Counted from the first letter of the stretch, positions 25,285-41,929 are shown. The stretch is 64,000 bases of DNA from IMGVR_UViG_3300038463_000730:1-64000, one strand, 5' to 3'. Made by a program: numbers and translations. Notes: generated by a model from the sequence alone, not told the origin.

Positions 25285-26202
25285 ATGAAGTCCCTCCTAA
25301 AAGGCATGCCACCCGGAATCGTCGGGAAACCTATATTTGAAAACGGTCAGACTCGTTACAGGACAGCCGGGCCGGAGGGACCGGGATATTGGACCCGCAC
25401 GGAACAAGGCTATATGATCTGGGAAGGTGACCCGGCAAAACCTCAAGGAGAACTAAACCGAGCTAGTTTAGAAGACGCTCATCAGGAATTGATCCGGATG
25501 AAGCAACTACTTGATGAAAATTCTCCGCTTCCTCCTCTCCCGCCCATTCCACCGCTTCCAGTCTTGGATATGGATCCGATCCGGCCCACTCCTTACTTTG
25601 CGGAAGTTCTCCAGGCCAATCAGAATCGACTTAAAGAAGACCAGACGAACATGGAAAGGTTGGCTCGGAGCTATGAAAATTCTAGGCCTGAAATGAAATT
25701 GGAAGAAAACCCAAAACGTTTTTGCGAAACATGTTCGCAAGAATTACCAGTCTTGTTTACCGGTTCGTATCGAGATAATGCCAACCTGAATGCCAATCTG
25801 AATATTCGCGCAGTTAAAGAGTTAAAATCCATGTACCTGAAAAGTCTAGCACGAACCATCGGATTAACATTCCAGAAACGGATCATGATTCTCGGGCCAA
25901 ACGTTTGGTATTTTTTGATTGGGTTGTGGTTGTTGCTTCGTTGGGTATTTGTTCTCACGGTAGGAATTTGGTGCGCTGGAGATCTGGCGAACCAATTCTA
26001 CTTCCATTGGAACGTATCAGTATGGCATGAGGGAAACCTATCCATGCCGTATCTAGCTTGGTTTAGAACTTGGCTTCTTGGTTTGCCGGTTGTTGTTTTG
26101 TTCTTTGCCGGTTGGGGAATTTTCGGAGCCATTCATCATTTCGGGATGATGCATGTAAAATATCGGCACATCCAACTTCCGCCCGGACCGCCTCCCGGAT
26201 GA
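25285..26202 (+). CDS. membrane protein, Pro-rich N-terminal half, CxxC, two to three TM segments
   Basis: 305 aa ORF. Confidence 0.7.
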   Translation: MKSLLKGMPPGIVGKPIFENGQTRYRTAGPEGPGYWTRTEQGYMIWEGDPAKPQGELNRASLEDAHQELIRMKQLLDENSPLPPLPPIPPLPVLDMDPIRPTPYFAEVLQANQNRLKEDQTNMERLARSYENSRPEMKLEENPKRFCETCSQELPVLFTGSYRDNANLNANLNIRAVKELKSMYLKSLARTIGLTFQKRIMILGPNVWYFLIGLWLLLRWVFVLTVGIWCAGDLANQFYFHWNVSVWHEGNLSMPYLAWFRTWLLGLPVVVLFFAGWGIFGAIHHFGMMHVKYRHIQLPPGPPPG

Positions 26203-26639
26203 AGCCGGAACTTGACGAATGGGAAATTCCCGAGTCCGAACAGGTTAGACAATTGTTATCATTCCTTCAGTTTACCTCCGGTAAAAGTGCTCCAGTAATT
26301 AAGAAAATCGAGCGAGCCTTTTATTTACTAGGACATCGTATTCGATTCAACGAAGAAACCGTTCAAGCTAGTGGATGGTTCGGGTTTGAATTCGTTTGCG
26401 ATCGTTGTCATGTTTGGTTTTTCGTGCCGAGTTCGACATTGGAAAGTGACACGTTTAAAGGCAATAAGGTTTACTCCATCTATGCTTTGAATCGTTCGAT
26501 TCTTTCCGACGATCGTTCATTCGGCCCGCGAGTCTTTCGGGTTACGGATAAAGAAGAGGTCCTGACTCGTATTCCTCATCACAACATTGATTTCTTGAAA
26601 CCAAATTGGGTCTGTCATAAGTATCAGGTTATGGTATGA
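26199..26639 (+). CDS. family A (H-CxxC-C) paralogue
   Basis: LLGH...CDRC...CHKYQVMV-stop. Confidence 0.8.
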   Translation: MKPELDEWEIPESEQVRQLLSFLQFTSGKSAPVIKKIERAFYLLGHRIRFNEETVQASGWFGFEFVCDRCHVWFFVPSSTLESDTFKGNKVYSIYALNRSILSDDRSFGPRVFRVTDKEEVLTRIPHHNIDFLKPNWVCHKYQVMV

Positions 26640-26643
26640 TGGT

Positions 26644-26967
26644 ATGAGCGACGTTCCGATAAAAGTTCAGGAGCTATTCACAGCCAGATTACGAACCCTT
26701 GGTCATCGGGTCAACACATTCTATGAGTACGGTTATCATGATTTAATTGGTCAATGTTCTATTTGTTTGGCCAATTTTGCAATCGTACCGGGTGCCTCGA
26801 ATCGGCCCGGCATCCGTCATTTGTATTCTTTGCGCGAATTGCATCGACCTAGTTATCCTCGTTCTCTGGATATTTGGGGTTGTCGCGTTGAAGAAGGAAT
26901 CATAACCCGCGATATCAAGCTTCATTTCGCTCCATTGGTTTGTCCAAAGTTTGCGGCTTTTCTTTAG
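26644..26967 (+). CDS. family A paralogue
   Basis: TLGH...CSIC...CPKFAAFL-stop. Confidence 0.8.
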   Translation: MSDVPIKVQELFTARLRTLGHRVNTFYEYGYHDLIGQCSICLANFAIVPGASNRPGIRHLYSLRELHRPSYPRSLDIWGCRVEEGIITRDIKLHFAPLVCPKFAAFL

Positions 26968-26978
26968 ATAAGGTTCGG

Positions 26979-27361
26979 ATGCATCCCGAGTTCGTCATCT
27001 ATCGTCACGTCGGAGGAAAAAGTATCGTTCCGAAAGTTGAGCGGATCTTTCGTTTGCTCGGGCACCAAATCGAATGGAGTCCGTACATTCGTCATTTGCA
27101 TGTCGATGGTTACGATTTTCTTTGTAACCGGTGTTACGAGCGATTCTTTATGCCGAGTAAGAATTTCGCTCCTTTCTCGGTAGACATCGAGTATCCTCTT
27201 TATTTTGTTTGCGAATGAAATGGTCTTTCGATATCGGTGACTTCAAACTTGGGAATTGGATGTTCCAGGTCACGGATTTTGTTGGAGAGGATCTGACTTG
27301 GGATGGTCTAGCTTTTCTTCGGCCTCAGTATCTTTGCAAACGGTTTCATGTTCTTCTTTGA
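26979..27361 (+). pseudogene. family A paralogue split by a frameshift
   Basis: LLGH...CNRC ends at 27218; C-terminal ...YLCKRFHVLL-stop is in the -1 frame and ends at 27361. Confidence 0.7.
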
Positions 27362-27364
27362 CGA

Positions 27365-27805
27365 TTGCGCCGGATTTACATTTATAACCAGATCATGACT
27401 CCGGTTTTTCGCGCCTCTCAGATTGTTCTGGAGATCAACCGACATCTTCGAGTGTTTGGTCATCGGATTTCTCGTCTCGTAACCGATTCTGGAAAAGAGC
27501 TTGGAAGTCGTGGAGCACGGCGTTGGCGTCCCGGAACGGGCAGTCGCTTTGCCAATTGCGTTCATTGTCATGTTCGACTCGAAGCATTTTTGTTTCATTC
27601 CGGTTCTGGTGATGGAATTTCGAATATGTTTTGGGTTAGTAAAGTGGAGAAAGTTTATCGGCCCGGTGGATATATTACTCGATTCTTCCAGATAAAAGAA
27701 ACATCTTCCGGATTTGCTTTGGATGAACCGTATGCCAAATTACTAGAGCGACGTCAGAAGTATCCTGAGATATTGGTTTGTACCAGGATTGCTGCGTTCT
27801 TATGA
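27365..27805 (+). CDS. family A paralogue
   Basis: VFGH...CVHC...CTRIAAFL-stop. Confidence 0.8.
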   Translation: MRRIYIYNQIMTPVFRASQIVLEINRHLRVFGHRISRLVTDSGKELGSRGARRWRPGTGSRFANCVHCHVRLEAFLFHSGSGDGISNMFWVSKVEKVYRPGGYITRFFQIKETSSGFALDEPYAKLLERRQKYPEILVCTRIAAFL

Positions 27806-27966
27806 TCAGTACAATTCATGTTAGGTCGAACACATCGCATACTGGTTAAGCATCGGCCCGAGTTGGACTCAATCCATTGGAGTTTATTTGTTTTCGGAAT
27901 CAAATGTTCGATAGCGATCTGTCGAGATCTGCTTAGTGTCTTCTCCTACCGGTACCGAGGTGATGC

Positions 27967-28179: not shown

Positions 28180-28198
28180 GGACCGAGGCGAAGCCAAG

Positions 28199-28483: not shown

Positions 28484-28490
28484 CGAAGTC

Positions 28491-29108: not shown

Positions 29109-29114
29109 ACTCCG

Positions 29115-29481: not shown

Positions 29482-29778
29482 ATGAGTAATCAAGCTACCA
29501 AACTCGCGACCGTTCTTCTAGAACGCCTCGGCCACAAACCATCAGCTTGGACCGTGACCTCGCTCGGGTTCGATATTACGACTTGTACCGTATGCGATGC
29601 GCCGTTTCTCGTCGATAGCCGTGGTACTAAGATCATTCTCTCAACAACCGGCTTAATGAGTATTAGTGGTTGGGAGAAGACTTATACATTTAAACCAGAA
29701 GACGTTACATACTTTATTCGCCAGGTTGCTCGCCGGTTTCCTTGGGCTTTTTGCTTGAAGTTTCAGGTTATGGTATGA
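29482..29778 (+). CDS. family A paralogue
   Basis: RLGH...CTVC...CLKFQVMV-stop. Confidence 0.8.
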   Translation: MSNQATKLATVLLERLGHKPSAWTVTSLGFDITTCTVCDAPFLVDSRGTKIILSTTGLMSISGWEKTYTFKPEDVTYFIRQVARRFPWAFCLKFQVMV

Positions 29779-30152
29779 AACGCGATTCGATCAGCTTCTT
29801 TATTGAGAGGGACTCGGATCCATCTCATCAGAAATATGCCGAGCAGTTCATCCGTTTACTCGGCCATCGAACCAGTCCGTGGATCCTGGAACGCGCTCAT
29901 CCGAACTATGGTTCGTATTCCGGTATGTATCATCTTACTCGTTGCGCTCATTGTGACATGTTGTTCGACGTCAAGATCTATCATGATTCGGCCGATGTAA
30001 ATGCTGCCGATGGCTTAATGATATATTGGCGTAAGCACGAATATTCTGGCGAGAACGATGCCGATTTGGTCACTCGAATCAATAAAACGGCCAAAATGAT
30101 GCGCCAGCACCGAACCCAAGTCATCTGCCCGAGATTAACGGTATTGCTATAG
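29775..30152 (+). CDS. family A paralogue
   Basis: LLGH...CAHC...CPRLTVLL-stop. Confidence 0.8.
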   Translation: MKRDSISFFIERDSDPSHQKYAEQFIRLLGHRTSPWILERAHPNYGSYSGMYHLTRCAHCDMLFDVKIYHDSADVNAADGLMIYWRKHEYSGENDADLVTRINKTAKMMRQHRTQVICPRLTVLL

Positions 30153-30164: not shown

Positions 30165-30575
30165 ATGAACATCAAGCCCGAAGCACTATTTAAGAAGTTT
30201 CTCGAACGAATGCAACACACATATTCGATTCAGAAGAAGAAACCGACATCAAAACCAAACATCCACTTTGATGATGCGGAACTTCGTTTCGAAGAGATCG
30301 TTCGTGCTCGGTGCCATACTTGTCTTCGTGAGTACCGCCTGCTACTTACGAAAGAGACCAACTATACCAAAGTAGGTAAGGTAGGTCACACGTACGAAAT
30401 CCGTGTCAACGGTAATAAACAAGACAATGTATCGTACAACCGTTTGTTGTTTGGATTCGAGGGAGAGTTCGTCGATAACGAGATCATCATCCCGGAAGAT
30501 TGGTTTACTTCGGCTTACAAGATTGCGATGGAAAAGAAGCTATCTACCTGTACTAAATTCGATGTGATGAAATGA
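30165..30575 (+). CDS. family A paralogue
   Basis: RMQH...CHTC...CTKFDVMK-stop. Confidence 0.75.
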   Translation: MNIKPEALFKKFLERMQHTYSIQKKKPTSKPNIHFDDAELRFEEIVRARCHTCLREYRLLLTKETNYTKVGKVGHTYEIRVNGNKQDNVSYNRLLFGFEGEFVDNEIIIPEDWFTSAYKIAMEKKLSTCTKFDVMK

Positions 30576-31030
30576 GAAAACCGACTCATCTTCAAGAACT
30601 TCGCGCTTGGGCTCACGAACGAGCTAGATTGATCGGGCATTCAATAACTATTCCGAACCGATATTCTTTTGAGCCCGGAAGGCATCTTGGTTATTTAAGT
30701 TCTTGCGCTCATTGTCCACAGAAGTTTGTATTGTGTTTGGAACGGCGCCAACTTCAAAAAGACATATCCTATTCCGGCAAGTTCTCGCTTGAGACCGGTC
30801 ATCTCCTGTACCTGACCGATCAATATACCGAGGTTAGGAATGTCACGGGTTACCTTCGATCGATCTTTGGGCAAGAACTAAACAAGAAACGTTTCTCCGA
30901 TCTGCCGAGCTACTTTCATATCATCGGTGTCCACTGCTATCATTTGGATCGAACCATATCGATGGATGAACCGATGAAGAAACCGAGGACGAAGAAGTTC
31001 TTGTGTCCTCGGTTGAAGACGTTTTTATGA
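30572..31030 (+). CDS. family A paralogue
   Basis: LIGH...CAHC...CPRLKTFL-stop. Confidence 0.8.
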   Translation: MRKPTHLQELRAWAHERARLIGHSITIPNRYSFEPGRHLGYLSSCAHCPQKFVLCLERRQLQKDISYSGKFSLETGHLLYLTDQYTEVRNVTGYLRSIFGQELNKKRFSDLPSYFHIIGVHCYHLDRTISMDEPMKKPRTKKFLCPRLKTFL

Positions 31031-31500
31031 AAAACTACCCTGAGTCATTTTCTCATTATCCATGGTACATGGCATTCGAATACATCATCAACATGATGCG
31101 AATTGCGTGCCATCATCGGATGCAAATAGACGATACACCGCTTGTACGCACGATCGGAACCGACCAAGCATTTCTTGCCAATTGCATTGCTTGTGAAGCA
31201 ACGTTTATTATTATGTATCGCGCTTATTCTGGTGGAGCGGCTTCCATATGGGTTATGCAAACAATGGATTACGAAACTTTACAAACCAAAACTGATGTAA
31301 ACTTGATGTCTATTAACGGAATAACCGATATACGTAACGCATTCGGCACAGATGTCGTGAATAGTCTGCCGAATCCATTAGATGGACATTGGGTTGTTCC
31401 GGTAATGGTTCTTTACCAAGATGGTCTGGTTATTACACGACGAGAGCAAGATTATACGGACCAGATCAACTGGTGTTCGAGATTCAAATCATTCTGGTAA
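31027..31500 (+). CDS. family A paralogue
   Basis: ACHH...CIAC...CSRFKSFW-stop. Confidence 0.75.
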   Translation: MKNYPESFSHYPWYMAFEYIINMMRIACHHRMQIDDTPLVRTIGTDQAFLANCIACEATFIIMYRAYSGGAASIWVMQTMDYETLQTKTDVNLMSINGITDIRNAFGTDVVNSLPNPLDGHWVVPVMVLYQDGLVITRREQDYTDQINWCSRFKSFW

Positions 31501-31589: not shown

Positions 31590-31880
31590 ATGTCATATTC
31601 CTACACAAATTCCGTTATACCGAGCAAGTCACGGCGTTATGCTTTGCCTTGGGAGTTGAAAAACGGTCAATATATCCGCAGACTTTTTGCCGGAGAGACC
31701 GAATTAACTCCAATTATTTTGACGTTTGATTCTTTCCGTTGTTCATGGACGAGTCGCCCCGAATCCGCCTATTACGTTGGAATGTGTACCAGTCTTGAAG
31801 GAGCCAAATCAACGGCCGAGCGGCGTTTGAAGAAAATGGGGTTCCTATTCATAAGCAAACGTTTGGTTTGTATGTTGTGA
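31590..31880 (+). CDS. family B (PW...AK...L..xG) paralogue
   Basis: YALPW...EGAKSTAERRLKKMGF...KRLVCML-stop. Confidence 0.75.
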   Translation: MSYSYTNSVIPSKSRRYALPWELKNGQYIRRLFAGETELTPIILTFDSFRCSWTSRPESAYYVGMCTSLEGAKSTAERRLKKMGFLFISKRLVCML

Positions 31881-31895
31881 TGACGTGAGGATCTG

Positions 31896-32084
31896 ATGTA
31901 CCGTTATCGCCAAATTGAAAACGTCGTTCCAACCGAACTTGAAAACTTACTGAATAAAGAAGCAAAGGATGGCTGGGAACTTGCCAGTACGTACAATATC
32001 ATGCAACGTGACCCGTGGTCTCACTACCACAATAAATTGAATGTCGTTCTGCGCCGTGATCGACGGTTAGATTCATTCGGATGA
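31896..32084 (+). CDS. DUF4177-like small protein
   Basis: YRYRQI...ELENLLNKEAKDGWELAS...VVLRR. Confidence 0.7.
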   Translation: MYRYRQIENVVPTELENLLNKEAKDGWELASTYNIMQRDPWSHYHNKLNVVLRRDRRLDSFG

Positions 32085-32404
32085 AGAACAGAGTTGCTTA
32101 TCCATGGGTAACCAATCCAATACCTTTGTTGCGCATGATTGTTATGTATCGTGACCTTTATTGCAATTGGCATGAAGAACCAGTTCATAAGTTTGCCACG
32201 ATAGCTATCTACTATGAAGAAGCGGGTACGTTCATTATCGAAGGTCCGATCGAACAATTTATTCACGGAGAAGAGAAGAATCTTTTCGGCCAATATATCC
32301 CGGAATCCGAGATGACGTGGGACGTTGGCAAAGCATACGTTGACCGATATCTCGTATTGAACGGATTTCGCCTGGTAGATCAACGAGCCGCAATCTTCGG
32401 ATGA
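32081..32404 (+). CDS. family B paralogue
   Basis: VAYPW...GKAYVDRYLVLNGF...RAAIFG-stop. Confidence 0.7.
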   Translation: MKNRVAYPWVTNPIPLLRMIVMYRDLYCNWHEEPVHKFATIAIYYEEAGTFIIEGPIEQFIHGEEKNLFGQYIPESEMTWDVGKAYVDRYLVLNGFRLVDQRAAIFG

Positions 32405-32436
32405 CGACCGGCGCTTCCTGACTTCCATCGAGTCTG

Positions 32437-33042
32437 ATGATCAAAGAAGGAACCCGAATCACAGACGATCAGCCCCGAACACCGCTCATCGGTCAGTACA
32501 AGCTTCGCCAGGATGTCGTTCGTGTCTCAAAACGAATCGTGCGTCGTCTTGGGCATCTCATGCCGAAAGGAGCATGGCTCGAAACCTTCTCCTATCCTGG
32601 CTCGAAACTAACGGCGCGGTGTCGTCATTGTTCTCGCATTTTCGTTCTCTCGGGGCGCCCCGATGTCGGGCAAGGTAAGTGGAAGGTCGCGCCACAGTAC
32701 ACGACATCCGACGAACCAGGATTCATTGCGCGCTTCGAGCTTGACCCGTGGATTATGTTTGAAGTTATTTCAAACGCGGCAGAGATCGAGACGTCAACGG
32801 CGTTTCAAAGCGGTCGCGCGGCAACTTCTTCCGAACGGATCACGGATGTTGGCCCGAGGGATTGGGAACTGAACGCTTTTCAGCGCAGTTTTCATACGCT
32901 CGTGCAATTAGCAGGCGGAACACCTCCAACGTTCGAGGACGAATCTCTTGACGAAGAGACGAAGGAAGCTCGGCTCATTGAAAAGAAGCTCAAACCAATC
33001 GATAAACGTTTTTACTGCGCGAAGGTAAAGACCTGGTTGTAG
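32437..33042 (+). CDS. family A paralogue (long insert)
   Basis: RLGH...CRHC...CAKVKTWL-stop. Confidence 0.8.
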   Translation: MIKEGTRITDDQPRTPLIGQYKLRQDVVRVSKRIVRRLGHLMPKGAWLETFSYPGSKLTARCRHCSRIFVLSGRPDVGQGKWKVAPQYTTSDEPGFIARFELDPWIMFEVISNAAEIETSTAFQSGRAATSSERITDVGPRDWELNAFQRSFHTLVQLAGGTPPTFEDESLDEETKEARLIEKKLKPIDKRFYCAKVKTWL

Positions 33043-33082
33043 TCGGAAGTCGAGAGTCCGGTTGGGGAATCGTCTACTCGGG

Positions 33083-33478
33083 ATGATCGATGACTCGAAT
33101 GAGAGTGCTTATCGCTCGTACATGTTGCTGACGCATTTGGTTCTGCGTGTCATGGGCCATCGAATCGGTCCGTTCGCAAAACTTCGGGATGGAACCAGCA
33201 CACCGGGCGAGGGGCTCGTAGTCACGGATGAAGCGAAGTGTTCCGCTTGTGGCCGTTATTTTCGAGCGACCATGACAAACCGAACGTATTTTCAGATTCG
33301 CATTTCTCACGTTCATAACAATGTCATGTATTCGCCTCGCTCGTTCTACTTCGTAGCCAGCTTTGAGCCAACCAGCCGGGAATTGCTCGATGCACCGGTC
33401 AGCCATGTTCGTCGGTTCTTAGCAGCGGAGTCAAACTACAAGGAATCTATCTGTACACGTTTTAAGGTGATGGCTTAA
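33083..33478 (+). CDS. family A paralogue
   Basis: VMGH...CSAC...CTRFKVMA-stop. Confidence 0.8.
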   Translation: MIDDSNESAYRSYMLLTHLVLRVMGHRIGPFAKLRDGTSTPGEGLVVTDEAKCSACGRYFRATMTNRTYFQIRISHVHNNVMYSPRSFYFVASFEPTSRELLDAPVSHVRRFLAAESNYKESICTRFKVMA

Positions 33479-33497
33479 AAAAGGTTCGGGCATTATT

Positions 33498-33809: not shown

Positions 33810-34096
33810 ATCGTAAGACTGCTTTCCCTTGGCGTAAAGTGTTTGCTGTTTCGGAAGTCTATGCCAGGTTCGATCCGAAAGGCGTTAAGATTGCGCAGAT
33901 CATCGTTCGAAAAAGTGACGATGGTTCGTTCGCAATCTGGAATATCCTGGCGACCGAGATGATCGACGGTGATGCGATCACCGGGCGTTGCGAGACGTTG
34001 GACTACGCATTCGAATTAGTGGATGACACGTTAGAGATGCACGGCTGGACTCTTCTTTGCACGGATATGAAGTCGGAAACAGCAATCCGTTTGTAG
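33806..34096 (+). CDS. family B paralogue
   Basis: TAFPW...YAFELVDDTLEMHGW. Confidence 0.7.
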   Translation: MNRKTAFPWRKVFAVSEVYARFDPKGVKIAQIIVRKSDDGSFAIWNILATEMIDGDAITGRCETLDYAFELVDDTLEMHGWTLLCTDMKSETAIRL

Positions 34097-34097
34097 C

Positions 34098-34442
34098 ATG
34101 ATTACTCGGTATGTACTTCCTTGGACCGCCATTCCGAAGGCTCTACGAGCCCCGGATTATCGGTACTATTACTCACGAACAATCGTTTCCCCAACCATTC
34201 CGTATGGCATGGGGTTGTCTGCTGGTTCGGTTCATCTTCTTAATGGGAAATACAAAGGACAATGTGGTCCGAATGATTGGCAATGGGCCGTATGGAACTG
34301 GCAAGAGGAACCTCTTCGGCATTCAGTTGATTCATGGTCTGGAGTCGGTTGCACGGAAGAACAAGCTCGTCGTTATGTAGATAAAAAGCTACGTAAGCTT
34401 GGATTCAAATTCGTTACAAAAAAGTGTTTGGTGTTCCTATGA
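34098..34442 (+). CDS. family B paralogue
   Basis: YVLPW...QARRYVDKKLRKLGF...KKCLVFL-stop. Confidence 0.75.
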   Translation: MITRYVLPWTAIPKALRAPDYRYYYSRTIVSPTIPYGMGLSAGSVHLLNGKYKGQCGPNDWQWAVWNWQEEPLRHSVDSWSGVGCTEEQARRYVDKKLRKLGFKFVTKKCLVFL

Positions 34443-34891
34443 GCGAAGCTGCAACCAAACGCCCGGATGAAAACGACATCCTACGAATCGTACATAATAC
34501 CATTACAGGAGCTATTCGTCGGATTGGTCACCAGCTCGCCGAAAACAAATGGAAAGAAGGACCGGTCATTTACGGATATCATCACGGTCATGCGTGGTGG
34601 CAGGATTGTGCCCGTAAATGTAAATGGCGATTCGCAATCGAGAAACAGCTTGATATTGCCGGTCGCACCCGTTTCGATATACGAGCGGTCGTCGTTCATA
34701 ACGAGAATCCGTTCATGCAAGAGATCCTGGAAAGCCACTCGCTATTTGAAATCGTTCTAGGACCGGACTTGAACCTCATCGGAGATTACACAAAACAGAA
34801 CGTCATCATTCCACTAGACGAGAACGTGATGAGAACGTTTGTTCTCGGCAGTAAAGATTGTCTATGCAGTCGTTTAACAAATTTCATCTAG
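34439..34891 (+). CDS. family A paralogue
   Basis: RIGH...CARKC...CSRLTNFI-stop. Confidence 0.8.
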   Translation: MSEAATKRPDENDILRIVHNTITGAIRRIGHQLAENKWKEGPVIYGYHHGHAWWQDCARKCKWRFAIEKQLDIAGRTRFDIRAVVVHNENPFMQEILESHSLFEIVLGPDLNLIGDYTKQNVIIPLDENVMRTFVLGSKDCLCSRLTNFI

Positions 34892-35265
34892 AGTTCCCGC
34901 TCGTCACGGATGAAATCGTTGCGAAGGCGACGCTTATCCTGACCATGCTAGGACACAAAATTGATGAAACGTCATGGGAGATCGAATCATACGGCCACAC
35001 GTTTAAAGCAGCGGCTCCACGAGTGCGTTGCTTGATTCAGAACTGCACTCACGTTTTTGGATTGATGGAAATGAGGTTTCCACGAAGTGTCAAACTGATT
35101 CGATACTTTGAACTAAACAGTGATAAAATACCAGACATACTTCTACTTATTCCAGGTCCGAGCGTTTCGCTAGATCAACTTCGAGCTACGGTAAAAACGC
35201 ACCCTGACTTTAATACTAGAGAAGTAGAACAAGCTTATTGTGTTCGGTACCGGAACCTGAGATGA
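34858..35265 (+). CDS. family A paralogue
   Basis: MLGH...CLIQNC...CVRYRNLR-stop. Confidence 0.8.
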   Translation: MSMQSFNKFHLEFPLVTDEIVAKATLILTMLGHKIDETSWEIESYGHTFKAAAPRVRCLIQNCTHVFGLMEMRFPRSVKLIRYFELNSDKIPDILLLIPGPSVSLDQLRATVKTHPDFNTREVEQAYCVRYRNLR

Positions 35266-35540
35266 ACCGTGACCTGAGCAAAATGTTGTTTCCTTGGCAA
35301 CAGCTTCCACGTCATCGGCACGCCAACTACTCTGCTCGTTACGTTAGACGCGATCGTTACGGTGAAAATATCGCTTGGATTTGGTTAAGATCGGACAGGA
35401 AGGACTGGTTATGGGAAATCTCATCAACGGGCTTAACGGGTTTCGATATGGACTTGCAGGTAGCGATGACGAAAGTGAATATCTTGCTGATCTCCGCAGG
35501 GTATACGGAACTACCAAACCGACTAAAGGTTCTCCTATAA
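35262..35540 (+). CDS. family B paralogue
   Basis: MLFPW...VAMTKVNILLISAGY...NRLKVLL-stop. Confidence 0.75.
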   Translation: MNRDLSKMLFPWQQLPRHRHANYSARYVRRDRYGENIAWIWLRSDRKDWLWEISSTGLTGFDMDLQVAMTKVNILLISAGYTELPNRLKVLL

Positions 35541-35551
35541 TTCGGATCGCC

Positions 35552-35857
35552 ATGCCATGGCATCGCGACTATTGGGAGAATGGTTGGCCAGCACCGAGTC
35601 AACCGTGCAACGATAAACGAGTTCGTATGATGTCGATGCGGATGAATCCGGAACGATACATGCTCGGAACGATTGTTCAGAACCTCGGGCAGAAAGATTT
35701 CTCTTGGGAAGTTAACAGTCAGGTATTGACGGAGAATATACTAGACGAATGGAAAGGACGATGCCGTTCCGAACTCGACGCCACTTTAACGGTCGAACGT
35801 ATTCTCCGAGAGAATTGCTTCAAACTACTAGAAGAGAAGCACTTGTTACTAGGATGA
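35552..35857 (+). CDS. family B paralogue
   Basis: MPW...DATLTVERILRENCFKLL. Confidence 0.65.
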   Translation: MPWHRDYWENGWPAPSQPCNDKRVRMMSMRMNPERYMLGTIVQNLGQKDFSWEVNSQVLTENILDEWKGRCRSELDATLTVERILRENCFKLLEEKHLLLG

Positions 35858-36642
35858 AACCTGTCAGCACAAAGATGTCTCGAATCCAAGATCAGCTGAC
35901 CATTCTCAAAGAATGGAGAGCGTTCGAGTTCTTTGGCATTCGATTGATGGATAAACTTGCTCACGACATCTATCCGATGGAAGTGAAGCTTGAAGCTCGT
36001 CCAACCGACATCAATGCTTACACCGAATGTAGGCGTTGTCTCAAGAGCTTTCGCTTCCGTCTTATGCAAATGGCGAATGGTGACAAGTTCTGGCGACTGA
36101 CTGGCCGAGCCACAACTAATTCTCATCATTCATACGAACTACCTTGTTACGATCTTGACTATGATAGTCCGCAAGCCGGGATCGAGCTGTTAAGCGACAT
36201 CGATGACAACGGATTGTTCTGTTCAGAGGTTCGTGAATGTCACATCGATCGTAAAGAGTTCAAGAAGAAGCTCTATAAACTTGCGAAACTATCCTCTAAA
36301 TACTTCGAGCATTGTTTTTTGCATAAGGCTACGTTCAAACGGATCGTAGCCGGTTACATGACTCAAGGTGACATCACGTACACTCGGGCCCGAACTGCCG
36401 CGTTCGAGGGTCGATGCCGCGTTTGTAACATGACCTTCGGTATTCGTGTGGATGATCAGATTCACACATTCTTTCTTGGTGGGCCGAGCGGTAAATCGAT
36501 TCTGATTGAGAAAGCCGATGTACTAAATGTTGACGATTGGCTGGTCGATGCATCAAAACGCATAAGAAATGAAACGAACATCACCTTCAAAAACCAAGAC
36601 TATGCTCATTTCGCCTGTACTCGTCTCGAAATTCTTAAGTGA
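35854..36642 (+). CDS. family A double-domain protein
   Basis: KLAH...CRRC...LFC; then YFEH...CRVC...CTRLEILK-stop. Confidence 0.75.
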   Translation: MKPVSTKMSRIQDQLTILKEWRAFEFFGIRLMDKLAHDIYPMEVKLEARPTDINAYTECRRCLKSFRFRLMQMANGDKFWRLTGRATTNSHHSYELPCYDLDYDSPQAGIELLSDIDDNGLFCSEVRECHIDRKEFKKKLYKLAKLSSKYFEHCFLHKATFKRIVAGYMTQGDITYTRARTAAFEGRCRVCNMTFGIRVDDQIHTFFLGGPSGKSILIEKADVLNVDDWLVDASKRIRNETNITFKNQDYAHFACTRLEILK

Positions 36643-37075
36643 TCCAGATGAACCCGATTACTACAAAGCGGCTCGGATCGTTGCCAACTTAATGAAGCAT
36701 GACTTGGCTGAAAAGAATCCTTGGAAGAAACTGCAAGGGGAATACGGAACAGTCGTGGATGGCCACTGCCAATGCCTCTACCCAACGTGTCAACGGCATC
36801 TCTTTGTTTGCAAGGTGAATCTCCCGATCGATCCGACCTTCCTTAATAAACTAGGAATCATCGAGGAGAAAACAACCCACGCCTACTATCTCATTCAGCA
36901 GCATGAAGGACGGGAACAGACACTCTGCACGCTCGGCTACGGTCGCACGGATCGCCGGTATGCTAAATACCGACAGTATCATGCGTACGTATCGATCCCC
37001 AGGTTGTTAGCTGGTAAACAAATCATTCAAACTGACGATAAGTACTTGTGCGGTAGATTTAACATTCTCCGGTGA
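36569..37075 (+). CDS. family A paralogue (start uncertain)
   Basis: LMKH...CLYPTC...CGRFNILR-stop. Confidence 0.75.
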   Translation: MKRTSPSKTKTMLISPVLVSKFLSDPDEPDYYKAARIVANLMKHDLAEKNPWKKLQGEYGTVVDGHCQCLYPTCQRHLFVCKVNLPIDPTFLNKLGIIEEKTTHAYYLIQQHEGREQTLCTLGYGRTDRRYAKYRQYHAYVSIPRLLAGKQIIQTDDKYLCGRFNILR

Positions 37076-37078: not shown

Positions 37079-37426
37079 ATGTCAGATTTTGACTTGGTAT
37101 TTCGAGACTCGATGTCGTTTATCAAACGATTGGGTCATCGTATCCCGCTCGGAGAATGGCGGGACATACGTGGTGGCACATTAGGATGGTGCTCGGCCTG
37201 TGAACGCGGATTCATGTTCAAACGTATTCCGGTAGAACAATTCATACTATTTGAGTGTACCGATTCGTACAATCATGGTGCATCTGCTGCGATAGCTTAT
37301 TGGTCCAGCAAATTACATTCTTTTCAAAAAGGTTACTACAAGATATTTAAAATTGGTGACCCCGTTGATTTCGTTTCTGCTACTCATACCAAATTCATGT
37401 GCTCCAGACTACGGGTAATGATGTAA
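37079..37426 (+). CDS. family A paralogue
   Basis: RLGH...CSAC...CSRLRVMM-stop. Confidence 0.8.
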   Translation: MSDFDLVFRDSMSFIKRLGHRIPLGEWRDIRGGTLGWCSACERGFMFKRIPVEQFILFECTDSYNHGASAAIAYWSSKLHSFQKGYYKIFKIGDPVDFVSATHTKFMCSRLRVMM

Positions 37427-37755
37427 TGCACCTAGAATATTTCTCTGCGTTCCTTCGTCATCTCGGTCATGAACTGGCTGACTGGAGAATGATCGAGTCC
37501 AAATATTGGAAAGAGTTCCATACCTATTGTCCGAAAGTTGGTTGTGGCAAAATGTTCAAGATCCACAACCACTCTAGTCAATGGACAATGGATCGAATCA
37601 TGGTTAATCAATACGGCCATGACCGTGAAGAGAAAGTTATGGATTTCCATGATCGTGAACTGAGCGCATGGAATGGTGAGCCGCTTAATTATCATCGGGA
37701 GAAAGCTACCATATACAAGCAACATCTGTGTTCGAAAGTGAAGGCTTTTCTATGA
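37426..37755 (+). CDS. family A paralogue
   Basis: HLGH...CPKVGC...CSKVKAFL-stop. Confidence 0.8.
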   Translation: MHLEYFSAFLRHLGHELADWRMIESKYWKEFHTYCPKVGCGKMFKIHNHSSQWTMDRIMVNQYGHDREEKVMDFHDRELSAWNGEPLNYHREKATIYKQHLCSKVKAFL

Positions 37756-38069
37756 GTTTCTATCACAACAAACGAGTTATCCTGATCACAACCAAACTAC
37801 TCCAGCATTTCGGCCATGAGCTTGACCCGGTCAACTGGCAGCCTGGGGAGGACTCGGATCTGGTCAACGCTTGCACGAATATGGAGTGTCGGAATCGGTT
37901 TACTTTGTTCACACCTTTTCCACACAACTACTCGGCCGATCGTATCTGGCGTATGATGAACATCGAATCATTCGAAGGCTTCCACTTCAATGAGAGCATG
38001 GAGTATCAGGAAGTAAAGAATCGTGTATTGCGCATTCGTAATAAGAACCTGTATTGTGGCTGTCACTAA
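37752..38069 (+). CDS. family A paralogue lacking the C-terminal tag
   Basis: HFGH...CTNMEC...LYCGCH-stop. Confidence 0.75.
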   Translation: MSFYHNKRVILITTKLLQHFGHELDPVNWQPGEDSDLVNACTNMECRNRFTLFTPFPHNYSADRIWRMMNIESFEGFHFNESMEYQEVKNRVLRIRNKNLYCGCH

Positions 38070-38398
38070 TGGCCCGTTCTTTGTACCATAGGAAAGCTGA
38101 ATCTGGCTTGCGTACCCTAGGTCATAAGATCGAGGTACGTGAGGTCATCCCGACTCTCAACGAATTGAACGCGCGAGCCGTGTTTACCGACTATGTGGTA
38201 AAACTGTGGGTATGTTTAAAATGCAAAAAAGTATTCATGCTACACAAAACGCCCAGCTCGCAGTACGTTACCAAGCACGTTGAACAATTCTACTCAACAT
38301 TCATGTTTACTGTCCTGCGTGGCGAGGTGTATGGTCAGACCTTCCTAAACAAGGTTGACAGGTATTTCATATGCGACCGACTGAAGAATCTAGCGTAG
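38069..38398 (+). CDS. family A paralogue
   Basis: TLGH...CLKC...CDRLKNLA-stop. Confidence 0.8.
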   Translation: MARSLYHRKAESGLRTLGHKIEVREVIPTLNELNARAVFTDYVVKLWVCLKCKKVFMLHKTPSSQYVTKHVEQFYSTFMFTVLRGEVYGQTFLNKVDRYFICDRLKNLA

Positions 38399-38772
38399 AA
38401 GAGTCCGGCATAAGAGAAGCTGAAATCGTCAGCTTCAATCTGGACTGGAGCATTTGCGAATCGAACGTGGCGAAGATTCTTACGAGCTGGGGTCACCAGA
38501 TCGACGAGCAATCCTGGGTCAAAAACAAAGCCGATGAAGGCCGATTAATTTGGTGCTCGAACGAATCTTGTCGAAAACTTTTCCAGGTCACTTTAATCGG
38601 TGGCACAAACATCGCCTGGAACATCGGACAGCTTATCGTGAAGGAAGATGAAGAGCATCTTTATCGACGCGGAATCATCATCTTGTTCAACGACATTTAC
38701 TACAATGTCAGCCACTTAAAACGGGGAGTTAAACCCGAATTCTTTTGTTCTCGGTACATTAACTTCAGGTGA
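38371..38772 (+). CDS. family A paralogue
   Basis: SWGH...CSNESC...CSRYINFR-stop. Confidence 0.8.
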   Translation: MRPTEESSVEESGIREAEIVSFNLDWSICESNVAKILTSWGHQIDEQSWVKNKADEGRLIWCSNESCRKLFQVTLIGGTNIAWNIGQLIVKEDEEHLYRRGIIILFNDIYYNVSHLKRGVKPEFFCSRYINFR

Positions 38773-39267: not shown

Positions 39268-39533
39268 TGGACGAGTGCCCTCTATGTGGGTCGTGCGTTC
39301 CGTCGCTGTGTGATTGCTCGGCAACCCTGAAACAAATTCACAACGATCTAGTCGAGATCAATCGGCGAATCGAAAGTGAACGACCTCGGAATACACCGAT
39401 CACGATCCTTCCAGTCCCGGATAAGAAAATCAAATACTCACCCGACCTCAGAACTCCTGCGGAACCAACCTCGAAACTAGCTCAGTTCTTTAGACGTATA
39501 AAGGATTGGTTTCGTGGTATATGGTCGTGGTGA
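39267..39533 (+). CDS. hypothetical protein (N-terminal CxxC...CxC)
   Basis: 88 aa ORF. Confidence 0.6.
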   Translation: MDECPLCGSCVPSLCDCSATLKQIHNDLVEINRRIESERPRNTPITILPVPDKKIKYSPDLRTPAEPTSKLAQFFRRIKDWFRGIWSW

Positions 39534-39904
39534 CATTAGCAGCAATTCAAGCGCCAATAATCAAACGAGCCGTTCGAGTCTTCCAGCACTTCGGTCATCA
39601 TTTCGATCTTCAGCGGGTCAAACTAAAACCAAACTTCCGTCCTATCTCTCGCTTTCCTGACCCGAACATCAATCTAGCTGTCGGACCGAACAAAGGACAG
39701 AAAGTCTATTGCGCAGGGTACGCTTCGGTTTGTACGGTGTGCAGCGTTAATCTAGGCATGCAAGAAAGCCCATTCGAACATGAGTGGGCTTTTTCAATTA
39801 ACGAGTTGGTACTTCGGGATTACTCAGAAGACGAGCAGCTAAACACCGAACTACACCGTAGATACCCAGGTCTGGTTTGTCCCCGTCTTAGGAATTTCTT
39901 ATGA
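39521..39904 (+). CDS. family A paralogue
   Basis: HFGH...CTVC...CPRLRNFL-stop. Confidence 0.8.
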   Translation: MVVVTLAAIQAPIIKRAVRVFQHFGHHFDLQRVKLKPNFRPISRFPDPNINLAVGPNKGQKVYCAGYASVCTVCSVNLGMQESPFEHEWAFSINELVLRDYSEDEQLNTELHRRYPGLVCPRLRNFL

Positions 39905-40284
39905 TCGTCAACACCGAGCAACAAGCCAAACTTCACAAAGTTGTCAGTGATTGTGTTACGGCTTTCGACTTCATTGACCATTCGTTCCCATTTAGACTTC
40001 TACGGCAAGCATCGATGGTAGCAGCCCACATTCCTGAGGTCAAAGAATATCCTCGAACAACTACAACACGATTCGTTGGTTATTGCCGAAACTGTTCTAT
40101 TGAAATAATGTTAACTGTCGGATCATTCCCAATGCGTACGTACACTCACTATGATTTGTTTTTCAATCGAGAACGGTCTTTCAATCTCGTTCTAGACCGC
40201 ACGTTCATTAAAGACCTGGGGTTTCGTACACACTCGAATGGTTTCACAATACCGATTTGCAAAAAGTTCGAGGCTTTCGTATGA
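39901..40284 (+). CDS. family A paralogue
   Basis: FIDH...CRNC...CKKFEAFV-stop. Confidence 0.75.
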   Translation: MIVNTEQQAKLHKVVSDCVTAFDFIDHSFPFRLLRQASMVAAHIPEVKEYPRTTTTRFVGYCRNCSIEIMLTVGSFPMRTYTHYDLFFNRERSFNLVLDRTFIKDLGFRTHSNGFTIPICKKFEAFV

Positions 40285-40619
40285 GAACGAAGATTCAGAT
40301 TGAACTGGAGACGTTAGCCCGAGCCATGAGTAAACGTTTTCTACACAAATTCTGGGGCAAAGAATACATCGGCTTAATCAAACGAGTCAAAGGGTACTGT
40401 AGTCACTGCGGCATTCAAATTCTATTGGTCAAAGGAAAGGGTGCCGAGCATTCGTTATTCCTTGGGACACGACACTTTCGCGTGGGCAATGAGCGGTTCG
40501 CTTCATCCGGAACTTATCCTAGCTTGATCGTTTCAAAAATGCTGATCATGCCATCAGATCCGATATCGAGAGAATTGCTTCTTGAGCACGGCTGTAAAAA
40601 GTTCGTAGCTTTACTATGA
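40281..40619 (+). CDS. family A paralogue
   Basis: RFLH...CSHC...CKKFVALL-stop. Confidence 0.75.
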   Translation: MRTKIQIELETLARAMSKRFLHKFWGKEYIGLIKRVKGYCSHCGIQILLVKGKGAEHSLFLGTRHFRVGNERFASSGTYPSLIVSKMLIMPSDPISRELLLEHGCKKFVALL

Positions 40620-40634
40620 CGAGAGATCCGGGTC

Positions 40635-40991
40635 ATGACAGCTGTAATTGGAATGGCGGAATTGAACCTGGAAACAAAGCAAACATTTGAGGAGCTGGTC
40701 CAGATTGCCCGTCCCTACGTTCGTAAATTAGGCCACACGATTGGCGAGTGGGAGCTTGGGCCTCGACCTCACATCAGCTTCCACATCTTCACAATTTGCA
40801 AAGCGTGCAAGAAGAAAATCAAATGCCAGAAGTGCCTTGTCGTTGGGACTGAAGACGAGATCACGTATCGCTGGGAGATTATCGTTGGTAACTACATAAG
40901 TGTCTCGTTGAGCCGTGAAGCCGAACTAGTCGAAAACATTAAAGACACGTGGGAACGATGTCTCTGTACTAGACTATCGGTGATGCTGTAA
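40635..40991 (+). CDS. family A paralogue
   Basis: KLGH...CKAC...CTRLSVML-stop. Confidence 0.8.
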   Translation: MTAVIGMAELNLETKQTFEELVQIARPYVRKLGHTIGEWELGPRPHISFHIFTICKACKKKIKCQKCLVVGTEDEITYRWEIIVGNYISVSLSREAELVENIKDTWERCLCTRLSVML

Positions 40992-40992
40992 C

Positions 40993-41319
40993 ATGAAATA
41001 TCTTACGGAAGATAAACTACAGGTCATCCACACTGGCCTCCGAAAGATGGGACATCGCATCGATTGGAAATCTCCAGATGAACCGGTGTTCAATCTAAAT
41101 GGGGAACTGATCCTGGTCGGAACATGCCAGAATTGTCATCAACTGCTTGAATGTTTTTATTCTGGAATGAGTTCGGTCTGTAACGTCTACGTTGACAAGG
41201 TTCGAACGATATACATTTCGAAAAAGGGTGACGTTCGAATAAGTGGGATGAATGGGATGAAATATTACCCCGTGAGTTACGGCTCGATTCAATGCCCGAA
41301 GCTTGTTGTCATGCTTTAG
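40993..41319 (+). CDS. family A paralogue
   Basis: KMGH...CQNC...CPKLVVML-stop. Confidence 0.8.
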   Translation: MKYLTEDKLQVIHTGLRKMGHRIDWKSPDEPVFNLNGELILVGTCQNCHQLLECFYSGMSSVCNVYVDKVRTIYISKKGDVRISGMNGMKYYPVSYGSIQCPKLVVML

Positions 41320-41327
41320 GATAATCT

Positions 41328-41606
41328 TTGGCAAATCCACAGACTCAATCAATCGCCAGCATTTTCGCAGCGATAAAAAAGAAAACGGGGCATAAAGTCG
41401 ATAGGCTCGATAATGAATTCGTTCGCGGTTGGCTCGTTTATACGGCCAGGTGTCGATACTGCAATTCAGAAATTGAGCTTTACACAGAGGGAAATCTAGT
41501 CGCGATCAATAAATTCATTGCCGGTTCGTTTGAAAACAATCGATGGCGAATCAATCCATTGGTCACGAAGATGCTCTTGTGTAAAAGATTGAAGGTGATG
41601 TTGTGA
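41328..41606 (+). CDS. family A paralogue
   Basis: KTGH...CRYC...CKRLKVML-stop. Confidence 0.8.
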   Translation: MANPQTQSIASIFAAIKKKTGHKVDRLDNEFVRGWLVYTARCRYCNSEIELYTEGNLVAINKFIAGSFENNRWRINPLVTKMLLCKRLKVML

Positions 41607-41929
41607 TGCCGCTGATCATTTGGCCGTTGATTCCAAAGCCTGTCCCATCCGGGACAATCGAACAAAAGACCGAGTGGTTTTTAGCAATGCTTTGCGAGGT
41701 CCGCCGCCGTGCAGGACATCGCTGGGCACCTCTAAAGGAGGGAGCCTTTGACGTGCCGAGGGTCATTTGCCTCTACACATTCTGCCTCTCGTGTGGCATA
41801 TACATTCACATGTACCCGGAGGAACCACACCTTTACTTCCAGAATGGAACTGGAGGCTTACAGTTCGGTTTTGACATCCCAGACGGTTGGAAACCAAAGG
41901 TTTGCGACAAGCTGGCGTCATTCGTTTAG
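41603..41929 (+). CDS. family A paralogue
   Basis: RAGH...CLSC...CDKLASFV-stop. Confidence 0.8.
   Translation: MMPLIIWPLIPKPVPSGTIEQKTEWFLAMLCEVRRRAGHRWAPLKEGAFDVPRVICLYTFCLSCGIYIHMYPEEPHLYFQNGTGGLQFGFDIPDGWKPKVCDKLASFV

What the first reader, a model, noticed from the sequence alone, without database searches (positions are those of the whole stretch)
26199..41929. Array of ~27 hypervariable paralogues with an H...CxxC...C 'zinc clasp' (family A)
Seen: 27 tandem, often ATGA-coupled ORFs, mostly 90-200 aa, plus one outlier at 59970. They share almost nothing except (i) an N-terminal helix ending in (L/M/F)GH, often followed by a Trp, (ii) a CxxC or Cx3-4C pair roughly 10-35 aa later, and (iii) a lone Cys 8 residues from the C-terminus. 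The segment between CxxC and the last Cys differs in length and sequence in every copy. Established: His+3Cys is a standard structural Zn site. Inference: one Zn ion ties the N-terminus to the C-terminus, giving a constant scaffold that displays a variable binding surface. That would be an antibody-like repertoire of phage binders or effectors (anti-defence or host takeover) built by gene amplification rather than by a DGR. I recognise no described family with this architecture.
Basis: partly seen in the sequence, partly recalled or inferred. Interest (0 to 1): 0.92.

Follow-up and report, generated by a model that had tools for sequence, protein, structure and literature searches.

The report
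Huge-phage array of small zinc-clasp proteins
A roughly 0.5-Mb uncultivated phage carries 27 very old, individually conserved copies of an undescribed small protein with an invariant His plus three Cys, and the C-terminal tail of these proteins turns out to be shared by unrelated neighbouring gene families, which hints at a common partner or sorting signal.

Summary
There are 27 same-strand genes in 26199-41929, plus one at 59970. All share an N-terminal helix ending in G-H, a CxxC or Cx3-4C knuckle, and a Cys seven residues from the C-terminus. These four residues are invariant in 51 sequences from at least five phages, at 12% mean column identity. No Pfam, PHROG, PADLOC, PDB-sequence or Foldseek match exists. 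The window is the start of a 435-503 kb phage contig.

A structural His+3Cys metal site fits the data, but its geometry could not be measured because the tools return no coordinates. The "hypervariable, antibody-like" reading is not supported:
- Each copy has its own orthologue in related phages.
- Those orthologues are under purifying selection.
- Only 3 of 325 paralogue pairs are BLAST-detectable.
- There are no DNA repeats among the copies.

Two new points emerged. The last six residues, (K/R)-hydrophobic-x-x-hydrophobic-x, also end unrelated small proteins of the same gene block (10/19, P=2e-13) and of related phages. The constant part also carries a conserved basic patch.

Best reading: a fixed set of Zn-stapled small binders in an accessory block, sharing a C-terminal module. 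The closest analogue, the phage G Zn-ribbon expansion, is not homologous.

The parts
26199..26639 (+). family A member 1 (146 aa)
   Evidence: GH, CxxC and tail Cys. AF2 model has pLDDT 64, with the scaffold at 81-89.
26644..26967 (+). family A member 2 (107 aa)
26940..27361 (+). family A member 3, split into two ORFs by a frameshift (26940-27218 carries GH and CxxC; 27209-27361 carries the tail)
   Evidence: The same split (79 aa + 48 aa) is called in independent assemblies L005, L006 and L008. Not read through.
27395..27805 (+). family A member 4 (136 aa)
29482..29778 (+). family A member 5 (98 aa)
29775..30152 (+). family A member 6 (125 aa), ATGA-coupled
30165..30575 (+). family A member 7 (136 aa; QH instead of GH)
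30572..31030 (+). family A member 8 (152 aa), ATGA-coupled
31027..31500 (+). family A member 9 (157 aa; weakest in the leave-one-out test)
32437..33042 (+). family A member 10 (201 aa), with orthologues in four phages
   Evidence: 62%, 29% and 33% identity; L011 orthologue at 34%
33083..33478 (+). family A member 11 (131 aa)
34439..34891 (+). family A member 12 (150 aa; Cx3C knuckle)
34864..35265 (+). family A member 13 (133 aa; Cx4C knuckle)
35854..36642 (+). double-length member 14 (262 aa). The first half has AH and CxxC but no tail. The second half has H, CxxC and a full tail.
   Evidence: A 256-aa relative, P0022, has the same layout.
36602..37075 (+). family A member 15 (157 aa; KH, Cx4C)
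37079..37426 (+). family A member 16 (115 aa)
37426..37755 (+). family A member 17 (109 aa; Cx4C)
37752..38069 (+). family A member 18 (105 aa) with a truncated tail: only 3 residues follow the aligned Cys
38069..38398 (+). family A member 19 (109 aa)
38371..38772 (+). family A member 20 (133 aa; Cx4C)
39521..39904 (+). family A member 21 (127 aa)
   Evidence: orthologue in L004, 49% identity
39901..40284 (+). family A member 22 (127 aa; AH)
40281..40619 (+). family A member 23 (112 aa; LH)
40635..40991 (+). family A member 24 (118 aa)
   Evidence: orthologue at 72% identity
40993..41319 (+). family A member 25 (108 aa), the best-modelled member
   Evidence: AF2 with 51 sequences: pLDDT 75.9, pTM 0.66. 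Order is helix 6-18, His21, strands, CxxC 45-48 in a hairpin turn, strands, Cys101, helix 102-107. Orthologue at 76% identity.
41328..41606 (+). family A member 26 (92 aa, TTG start)
41606..41929 (+). family A member 27 (107 aa), the last of the array. It keeps the tail although no gene is coupled downstream.
59970..60347 (+). solitary family A member 28, among nucleotide-metabolism genes
   Evidence: Closest paralogue is 40993-41316 (E 1.5e-5).
31590..35857 (+). interspersed family B genes (31590-31880, 32081-32404, 33498-33809, 33806-34096, 34098-34442, 35238-35540, 35375-35857). They have no Cys motif, and most end in the same C-terminal hexapeptide.
   Evidence: Alignment A5 of 16 sequences. 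No profile relation to family A.
42907..47733 (+). further non-family genes that carry the shared tail (42907-43362, 43432-44043, 46775-47308, 47311-47733). They mark the extent of the tail-bearing block.

Best explanation
The region encodes 27 (plus 1) true paralogues of a previously undescribed family of small, mostly basic alpha/beta proteins from a clade of uncultivated huge phages.

Shown:
- Each protein has an amphipathic N-terminal helix ending in (R/K)(R/K)-hydrophobic-G-H-(K/R)-hydrophobic.
- A beta-hairpin follows, whose turn carries CxxC or Cx3-4C.
- Next comes a member-specific, mostly beta insert of 37-129 aa.
- The protein ends with a Cys followed by a seven-residue helix, x-(K/R)-hydrophobic-x-x-hydrophobic-hydrophobic.
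- The copies are ancient, and each is kept as an orthologue under purifying selection.
- Array content differs between phages by whole-gene gain and loss.
- The last six residues are shared with unrelated small-protein families of the same gene block.

Inferred:
- The invariant His and three Cys bind one structural Zn ion. It staples the two terminal helices to the knuckle, so a very small constant scaffold can carry very different inserts.
- The proteins are non-enzymatic binders made from an accessory block, for host takeover, counter-defence or regulation.
- The insert gives each copy its own target.
- The constant basic patch around the metal site, together with the shared C-terminal helix, engages something common to all. 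That could be a polyanion such as nucleic acid, or one partner or sorting machine.
For: Homology and invariance:
- H, C, C and C are invariant in 26 of 26 window members and 51 of 51 sequences overall.
- The leave-one-out HMM supports one coherent family.
- A profile search of 1.84 billion representatives returned only 41 hits. About 24 are the window's own proteins. About 17 are relatives that keep all four residues. The remaining 7 are long multi-stretch hits that look spurious.
- The tail is conserved at the protein level with varied synonymous codons.

Structure:
- Two AF2 models agree on the order helix, hairpin knuckle, sheet, Cys-helix.
- The ligand-bearing segments score pLDDT 78-90 and the inserts 43-59.
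- No known fold or family matches.

Evolution:
- Orthologues are syntenic in L003 and L004, with dN 0.17-0.9 and dS at least 1.9 or saturated.
- Other phages carry about 10 (L011), at least 17 (L015) and 2 (L018) members.

Charge: median pI is 9.0. Basic residues are conserved at His-4, His-3, His+1 and tailCys+2, and the tail contains almost no acidic residues.

Block-wide tail: present in 10 of 19 non-family genes in 26.2-48 kb (P=2e-13), 0 of 19 in 48-64 kb, 1 of 57 on the minus strand, and 13 of 29 in L011 (P=3e-16).

Context: a 435-503 kb phage contig. The genes are small, tightly packed and on one strand, next to a strand-switch region.
Against: - Metal binding and ligand geometry were not measured.
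- The models are of moderate confidence (pLDDT 64 and 76).
- There are no expression, localisation or interaction data, and the host is unknown.
- No sigma-70 promoter enrichment marks the block as early.
- A basic pI fits nucleic-acid binding at least as well as protein binding.
- The shared tail could be a purely structural C-terminal helix that arose repeatedly, with no common partner.
Confidence: 0.5

Rival explanations
1. The proteins are sequence-specific or structural nucleic-acid-binding proteins, such as transcription factors, RNA binders or DNA-packing proteins. The Zn-stabilised basic scaffold contacts the backbone and the insert reads the sequence. Iyer et al. proposed this for the roughly 35-copy Zn-ribbon expansion of Bacillus phage G.
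For: Median pI is 9.0, and 19 of 26 members exceed 8. A basic cluster is conserved next to the putative metal site and the tail lacks acidic residues. There is a published precedent for this reading of a Zn-ribbon expansion in a roughly 500-kb phage (PMC7824862).
Against: No match to any DNA- or RNA-binding family in Pfam, PDB or Foldseek. There are no repeated candidate operator motifs in the block. Seven window members are neutral or acidic. The family is not homologous to the phage G family (at most 5.5 bits).
Confidence: 0.2
2. The shared C-terminal hexapeptide is a sorting signal, for example for loading into the very large capsid for co-injection, or for handing proteins to one protease or chaperone. 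Family A would be the largest class of cargo. This would be a C-terminal counterpart of the N-terminal capsid-targeting sequence shared by the polymorphic internal proteins of T-even phages (my own knowledge of that system).
For: The tail ends unrelated families A and B, a CPxC family and several singletons, but not enzymes or the other arm of the window. It persists where no downstream gene is coupled, and the codons vary.
Against: The tail is predicted as a confident helix (pLDDT 78-85), not as a disordered peptide. That favours packing onto the protein's own core. No virion proteomics exists and no candidate receptor was identified. The block sits beside metabolic and replication-type genes, not structural genes.
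Confidence: 0.12
3. One reading: a rapidly diversifying, antibody-like repertoire generated by recent gene amplification, with the insert under diversifying selection.
For: Inserts differ completely between paralogues, and array content varies between phages.
Against: Orthologous inserts are conserved (47% identity overall, up to 73%), with dN far below dS. Paralogues are almost undetectable by BLAST, and adjacent copies are never the closest. There are no DNA repeats and no template/variable repeat pair.
Confidence: 0.05
4. The His plus three Cys bind an Fe-S cluster or act as redox or catalytic residues, not as a structural Zn site.
For: 3Cys+1His ligation of Fe-S clusters exists in other protein families (my own knowledge). 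The tools cannot tell which metal is bound.
Against: No match to Fe-S or thiol-enzyme families. The knuckle-in-a-hairpin plus helix-end ligands are typical of structural Zn sites. Knuckle spacing varies (CxxC to Cx4C).
Confidence: 0.05
5. The conserved tail is a nucleotide-level by-product: a ribosome-binding site or re-initiation signal for the overlapping downstream gene.
For: Twelve of 27 members overlap the next start. Some tails read AAG GTG ATG, which resembles a Shine-Dalgarno sequence.
Against: Synonymous codons vary at every conserved position. Tails occur on genes with no close downstream start. Met at -2 is not associated with coupling (24/38 against 43/85, p=0.24). Residues -3 and -2 co-vary as amino acids, as V-M or N/A/S-F.
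Confidence: 0.03

Closest known systems
Lineage-specific expansion (about 35 copies) of a Zn ribbon in Bacillus phage G (e.g. YP_009015343.1 = gp32), described by Iyer et al. 2021, PMC7824862
   Same: Both are roughly 0.5-Mb phages. Both carry dozens of small (about 90-130 aa) Cys-bearing paralogues clustered on one strand. Both combine a constant metal-binding element and a conserved C-terminal motif with a variable middle. Function is unknown in both.
   Different: The phage G copies have an N-terminal C4 ribbon (CPIC...CxxxC) and a C-terminal YWKENDRYL-type motif. Family A has His...CxxC...Cys spread over the whole chain. The family A HMM scores the phage G copies at 5.5 bits or less. tblastn of two family A members against all GenBank phages finds nothing.
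Classical zinc ribbon and treble-clef zinc fingers
   Same: A CxxC knuckle sits in a beta-hairpin turn. One further ligand sits at the start of a helix.
   Different: There is only one knuckle. The other two ligands are a His just after the N-terminal helix and a single Cys before the C-terminal helix, separated by 37-129 aa. No Pfam zinc-finger model reaches its threshold.
Polymorphic internal-protein locus of T-even phages, with its shared capsid-targeting sequence (my own knowledge; reviews PMC3012670 and PMC9026906 were found but not read)
   Same: Unrelated small proteins encoded side by side share only a short terminal peptide.
   Different: The T4 signal is N-terminal and is cleaved by the prohead protease. 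Here the shared peptide is C-terminal, is predicted helical, and nothing shows virion association.
Host-takeover and early small-gene modules of large phages (SPO1 terminal-redundancy module, T4 and T5 early ORFs; my own knowledge)
   Same: Blocks of many small, tightly packed, same-strand genes without database matches, near a genome end or strand switch.
   Different: Those modules consist of mostly unrelated genes, not a 27-member family. Early timing is not shown here.

Membership tests
Zinc ribbon (two CxxC knuckles) | Two knuckles, each giving two Cys ligands | tested here: not met
   Only one CxxC/Cx3-4C knuckle is conserved. The other invariant residues are a single His and a single Cys.
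Zinc ribbon (two CxxC knuckles) | Match to a curated zinc-ribbon profile | tested here: not met
   No Pfam model at or above its cut-off in 51 members.
Treble-clef zinc finger | Knuckle in a hairpin plus two ligands from the first turn of one helix | tested here: inconclusive
   The knuckle in a hairpin turn and a Cys just before a helix are predicted. The fourth ligand, however, is a His after a different helix. No coordinates were available.
Phage G Zn-ribbon expansion (Iyer et al. 2021) | Sequence homology to gp32-type proteins (CPIC ribbon, C-terminal YWKENDRYL motif) | tested here: not met
   The family A HMM against 14 phage G proteins of the cluster gives 5.5 bits or less. The motifs differ.
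Zinc-binding anti-sigma factors (ZAS) | H-x3-C-x2-C motif | tested here: not met
   His to first Cys is 17-45 residues.
WhiB-like Fe-S proteins | Four conserved Cys, including C-x2-C-x5-C | tested here: not met
   Three invariant Cys plus one His. There is no Cys five residues after the knuckle and no Pfam hit.
Diversity-generating retroelement targets | Template/variable repeat pair and a reverse transcriptase nearby | tested here: not met
   No long direct repeats in 26000-42100. No reverse transcriptase appeared among the window proteins scanned.
   51 of 51 sequences at 12% mean column identity.
   Structure prediction returns no coordinates. No metal analysis is possible.
Known anti-defence or defence proteins | Match to PADLOC or PHROG annotated models | tested here: not met
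   0 PADLOC hits in 51 members. Only single sub-threshold PHROG hits, all of unknown function.

The most novel reading that the evidence does not exclude
The C-terminal hexapeptide (K/R)-hydrophobic-x-x-hydrophobic-x is a sorting or docking signal used by a whole clade of huge phages. It would mark 40 or more unrelated small proteins (families A, B, a CPxC family and singletons) for one destination. That destination could be loading into the giant capsid for co-injection, or docking on one host or phage machine. Family A would then be a Zn-stapled minimal scaffold evolved to present many different inserts to that system.
Probability: 0.15. Interest if true: 0.85.

Novelty: new variant of a known kind. 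Interest (0 to 1): 0.55.

Why it matters
Huge phages owe much of their size to blocks of small genes that nobody can read. This block gives a concrete handle on one:
- a coherent 27-member family with four invariant putative metal ligands;
- a compact predicted fold with no match in PDB or BFVD;
- clear orthologues in several uncultivated phages;
- a C-terminal peptide shared across unrelated families.

If the scaffold is a Zn-stapled minimal domain that tolerates inserts of 37-129 aa, it is a natural display scaffold worth solving. If the tail proves to be a common docking or sorting signal, it would label a whole functional class of huge-phage proteins directly from sequence. If neither holds, the case is still a second, independent example of a large Zn-protein expansion in a 0.5-Mb phage, after phage G.

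Tried and rejected
- The search for related loci with the family alignment failed, because no stretch was conserved enough. Scans with single neighbouring proteins and with the A3 orthologue alignment found only the source contig in IMG/VR.
- Megablast of the array against GenBank phages found no match. tblastn of two members found no match even at E up to 10.
- The word-indexed protein search with the alignment added little, only 6 hits.
- Foldseek of both models gave nothing below E 0.03. The best PDB hits were polo-box and frataxin-like alpha/beta sandwiches with TM at most 0.36.
- The PDB sequence profile, PADLOC, Pfam and PHROGs on all 51 members gave nothing consistent.
- Seven long multi-stretch hits of the profile search look spurious: several have low-complexity or zinc-finger/Cys-rich Pfam matches, but others match unrelated domains (fn3, HTH) or nothing.
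- hhalign of family A against family B showed no relation, probability 1.2%.
- The idea that the tail is a ribosome-binding site for the coupled downstream gene was rejected.
- The sigma-70 promoter and terminator scan was not above shuffles. Rfam and tRNA scans were empty.
- Host inference from the histidine-kinase-like gene found no close cellular relative.
- Three literature searches found no description of this family. They did turn up the phage G precedent.
- The frameshifted member was not read through. Its two pieces were examined separately.

Full report
**What the window is.** The window is the first 64 kb of IMG/VR contig IMGVR_UViG_3300038463_000730 (434,688 bp), with the same coordinates. 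The same phage also appears as a 502,994-bp JGI contig. Recognisable genes fit a very large phage:
- an AlkB-like 2OG-Fe(II) oxygenase;
- an HNH endonuclease;
- a DEDDh exonuclease;
- a GMP reductase/IMPDH-type gene;
- DHFR;
- a papain-like peptidase;
- a histidine-kinase-like ATPase.

No GenBank phage resembles it at the DNA level. A left arm (1-23 kb) has GC 0.55-0.58 and genes mostly on the minus strand. It meets a right arm (GC 0.44-0.51, mostly 0.45-0.49; genes mostly on the plus strand) at an ORF-poor stretch, 22.8-25.3 kb.

**The observation.** It is correct.
- Twenty-seven plus-strand genes between 26199 and 41929, and one at 59970, share an N-terminal helix ending in G-H, a CxxC (or Cx3C/Cx4C) pair, and a Cys exactly eight residues from the end.
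- The strict tail pattern occurs 27 times on the plus strand and never on the minus strand.
- In 26 window members, and in 51 sequences once relatives are added, the only invariant residues are the initiator Met, one His and three Cys. Mean column identity is 12-15%.
- Measured spacings: His to Cys 17-45 aa, and knuckle to last Cys 37-129 aa.
- In the leave-one-out profile test, no true decoy outscored the left-out member in most runs. In five runs it ranked third, and that extra higher-scoring entry was not identified. In 20 of 26 cases E was below 0.01 for a nominal million-sequence database.

This is a homologous family, not a coincidental pattern. The exceptions are a frameshift-split member (26940-27361), a member with a truncated tail (37752-38069) and a double-length member (35854-36642). 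The split member is called identically in three independent assemblies. About 15 unrelated genes interrupt the array.

**Is it known?** No.
- Pfam, PHROGs, PADLOC and a PDB sequence profile give nothing consistent.
- A profile search of 1.84 billion cluster representatives returned 41 hits. About 24 are the window's own proteins. Seven long multi-stretch hits look spurious. About 17 are relatives from other metagenomes, and all of these keep the four residues.

**Structure.**
- AlphaFold2 with the 26-sequence alignment gave pLDDT 64 for member 1.
- With 51 sequences it gave pLDDT 75.9 and pTM 0.66 for 40993-41316.
- Both models show an N-terminal helix, then the His. The knuckle sits in the turn of a beta-hairpin and further strands follow. 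The last Cys comes immediately before a short C-terminal helix.
- The ligand-bearing segments are the most confident (78-90) and the inserts the least (43-59).
- Foldseek found nothing significant in PDB or BFVD. The best PDB hits (E 0.43) were polo-box and frataxin-like alpha/beta sandwiches with TM at most 0.36.
- The tool returns no coordinates. The key test, whether the four side chains meet, could not be run.
- Invariance of exactly His+3Cys, together with this topology, makes a structural Zn site the most economical reading. It remains an inference.

**Evolution.** Short contigs from other samples are syntenic with parts of the array: L003 with 32437-35857 and L004 with 38836-41929.
- Orthologue identity is 29-76%. 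dN is 0.17-0.9, while dS is at least 1.9 or saturated.
- The member-specific insert is only somewhat less conserved than the scaffold (47% against 58% identity).
- Within the window, only 3 of 325 paralogue pairs, and none of 25 adjacent pairs, reach BLASTP E<1e-3.
- No nucleotide repeats link the copies.
- More distant phages carry about 10 (L011, a 122-kb contig), at least 17 on both strands (L015) and 2 (L018, GC 0.35) members.

The family is therefore old and each copy is individually maintained. Arrays change by whole-gene gain and loss. For example, L003 has an extra member where the window has a family B gene. This contradicts a rapidly diversifying, antibody-like repertoire.

First, the last six residues are not specific to the family.
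- The pattern (K/R)-hydrophobic-x-x-hydrophobic-x also ends 10 of 19 non-family plus-strand genes between 26.2 and 48 kb. The background frequency per position is 0.018, giving P=2e-13.
- It ends 0 of 19 further right and 1 of 57 on the minus strand.
- Carriers include family B, with seven copies in the window and 16 sequences aligned. Family B has an LPW motif and no Cys, and no profile relation to family A.
- In L011 and L015 the pattern also ends an array of a third family with an N-terminal CPxC. In L011 it ends 13 of 29 non-family genes, P=3e-16.
- The motif is protein-level. Codons vary. It persists without a coupled downstream gene. Met at -2 is not linked to coupling. Positions -3 and -2 co-vary as amino acids.

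Second, the constant part is not only hydrophobic packing plus ligands.
- Basic residues are conserved at His-4 (65%), His-3 (51%), His+1 (59%) and tail-Cys+2 (96%).
- The tail contains almost no acidic residues.
- Median pI is 9.0.
- This suggests a constant positively charged surface next to the putative metal site.

**Most likely mechanism.** Confidence is about 0.5 for the whole statement, and higher for the structural part. A single Zn ion ties the end of the N-terminal helix, the hairpin knuckle and the start of the C-terminal helix together. This gives a minimal scaffold that tolerates very different inserts. The proteins are non-enzymatic binders of an accessory block. The insert sets the target. 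The constant basic patch and the C-terminal helix engage something common to all members.

The rivals are:
- nucleic-acid-binding regulators, favoured by charge and by the published guess for phage G;
- cargo marked by a C-terminal sorting peptide;
- a diversifying repertoire, contradicted here;
- an Fe-S or redox site;
- a ribosome-binding-site artefact, rejected here.

**Closest known.** Iyer et al. 2021 (PMC7824862) report a roughly 35-copy Zn-ribbon expansion in the 498-kb Bacillus phage G. They guessed it encodes transcription factors or structural DNA-binding proteins. I fetched that cluster. Its copies have an N-terminal CPIC...CxxxC ribbon, a variable middle and a conserved C-terminal motif. 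The design is the same, but there is no homology: the family A HMM scores 5.5 bits or less.

**Verdict.** The feature is real and the family is new. It represents an independent variant of a known kind, a large expansion of small Zn-type proteins in a huge phage. The block-wide C-terminal motif is unexplained and deserves follow-up. Function remains inferred.

Noticed in passing
window 26200-48000 (+ strand); L011:208-17671; L015; L018:8471-10815: A C-terminal hexapeptide, (K/R)-hydrophobic-x-x-hydrophobic-x, ends many unrelated small proteins of one gene block. It does not end enzymes or genes elsewhere in the window. Counts are 10/19 against 0/19 and 1/57 in the window, and 13/29 in L011.
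   Followed up: partly
window 31590-31880, 32081-32404, 33498-33809, 33806-34096, 34098-34442, 35238-35540, 35375-35857: A second undescribed small-protein family ('B') is interspersed in the array. It has an N-terminal LPW, a central Trp, a C-terminal A-x3-VD-x2-L-x3-GFK-x-L and the shared tail. It co-occurs with family A in L003, L009, L011, L015 and L018. It has no Pfam, PHROG or PDB match. One member gives a weak sub-threshold hit to PF16857, an RNA polymerase inhibitor (E 0.004).
   Followed up: partly
L011:208-5569 and L015:6275-7955: In more distant relatives there is a third tandem family, with an N-terminal CPxC ribbon-like motif and the same C-terminal tail. Its layout resembles the phage G Zn-ribbon expansion. 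It was not seen in this window.
   Followed up: no
window 26940-27361: One family member is split into two overlapping ORFs by a frameshift near a T-rich stretch. The same two-ORF call (79 aa + 48 aa) appears in independent assemblies L005, L006 and L008. It may be a pseudogene or a frameshift-dependent gene. No canonical slippery heptamer was seen.
   Followed up: partly
window 29023-29089: A perfect 12-nt tandem repeat (5.6 copies) encodes (PTVI)n at the C-terminal end of the AlkB-like 2OG-Fe(II) oxygenase gene (28491-29108), which sits inside the array.
   Followed up: no
window 22800-25285: An ORF-poor stretch lies where strand bias, GC content (0.55-0.58 on the left, 0.44-0.51 on the right) and GC skew all change. 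It contains two 37-nt direct repeats 70 nt apart (24185-24221 and 24255-24291), each with a TATAAT/TATATT box. These are possibly tandem rightward promoters feeding the array.
   Followed up: partly
window 44195-45256: A phage gene has a HATPase_c domain whose best tblastn matches are bacterial sensor histidine kinases (24-28% identity). No close cellular relative was found in GTDB genomes.
   Followed up: partly
window 49539-49802, 50059-50328, 50325-50591 (minus strand): Three small minus-strand ORFs of 87-89 aa end in a similar C-terminal motif (…L-x-G-H-V/P-x-E). They look like another small paralogous family.
   Followed up: no
window 57238-58047 (minus strand): A papain-family (Peptidase_C1) cysteine protease gene sits in a phage genome (E 2e-13).
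   Followed up: no
window 5149-5979: An HNH endonuclease gene with two HNH_3 stretches lies on the opposite strand to its neighbours in the GC-rich left arm.
   Followed up: no
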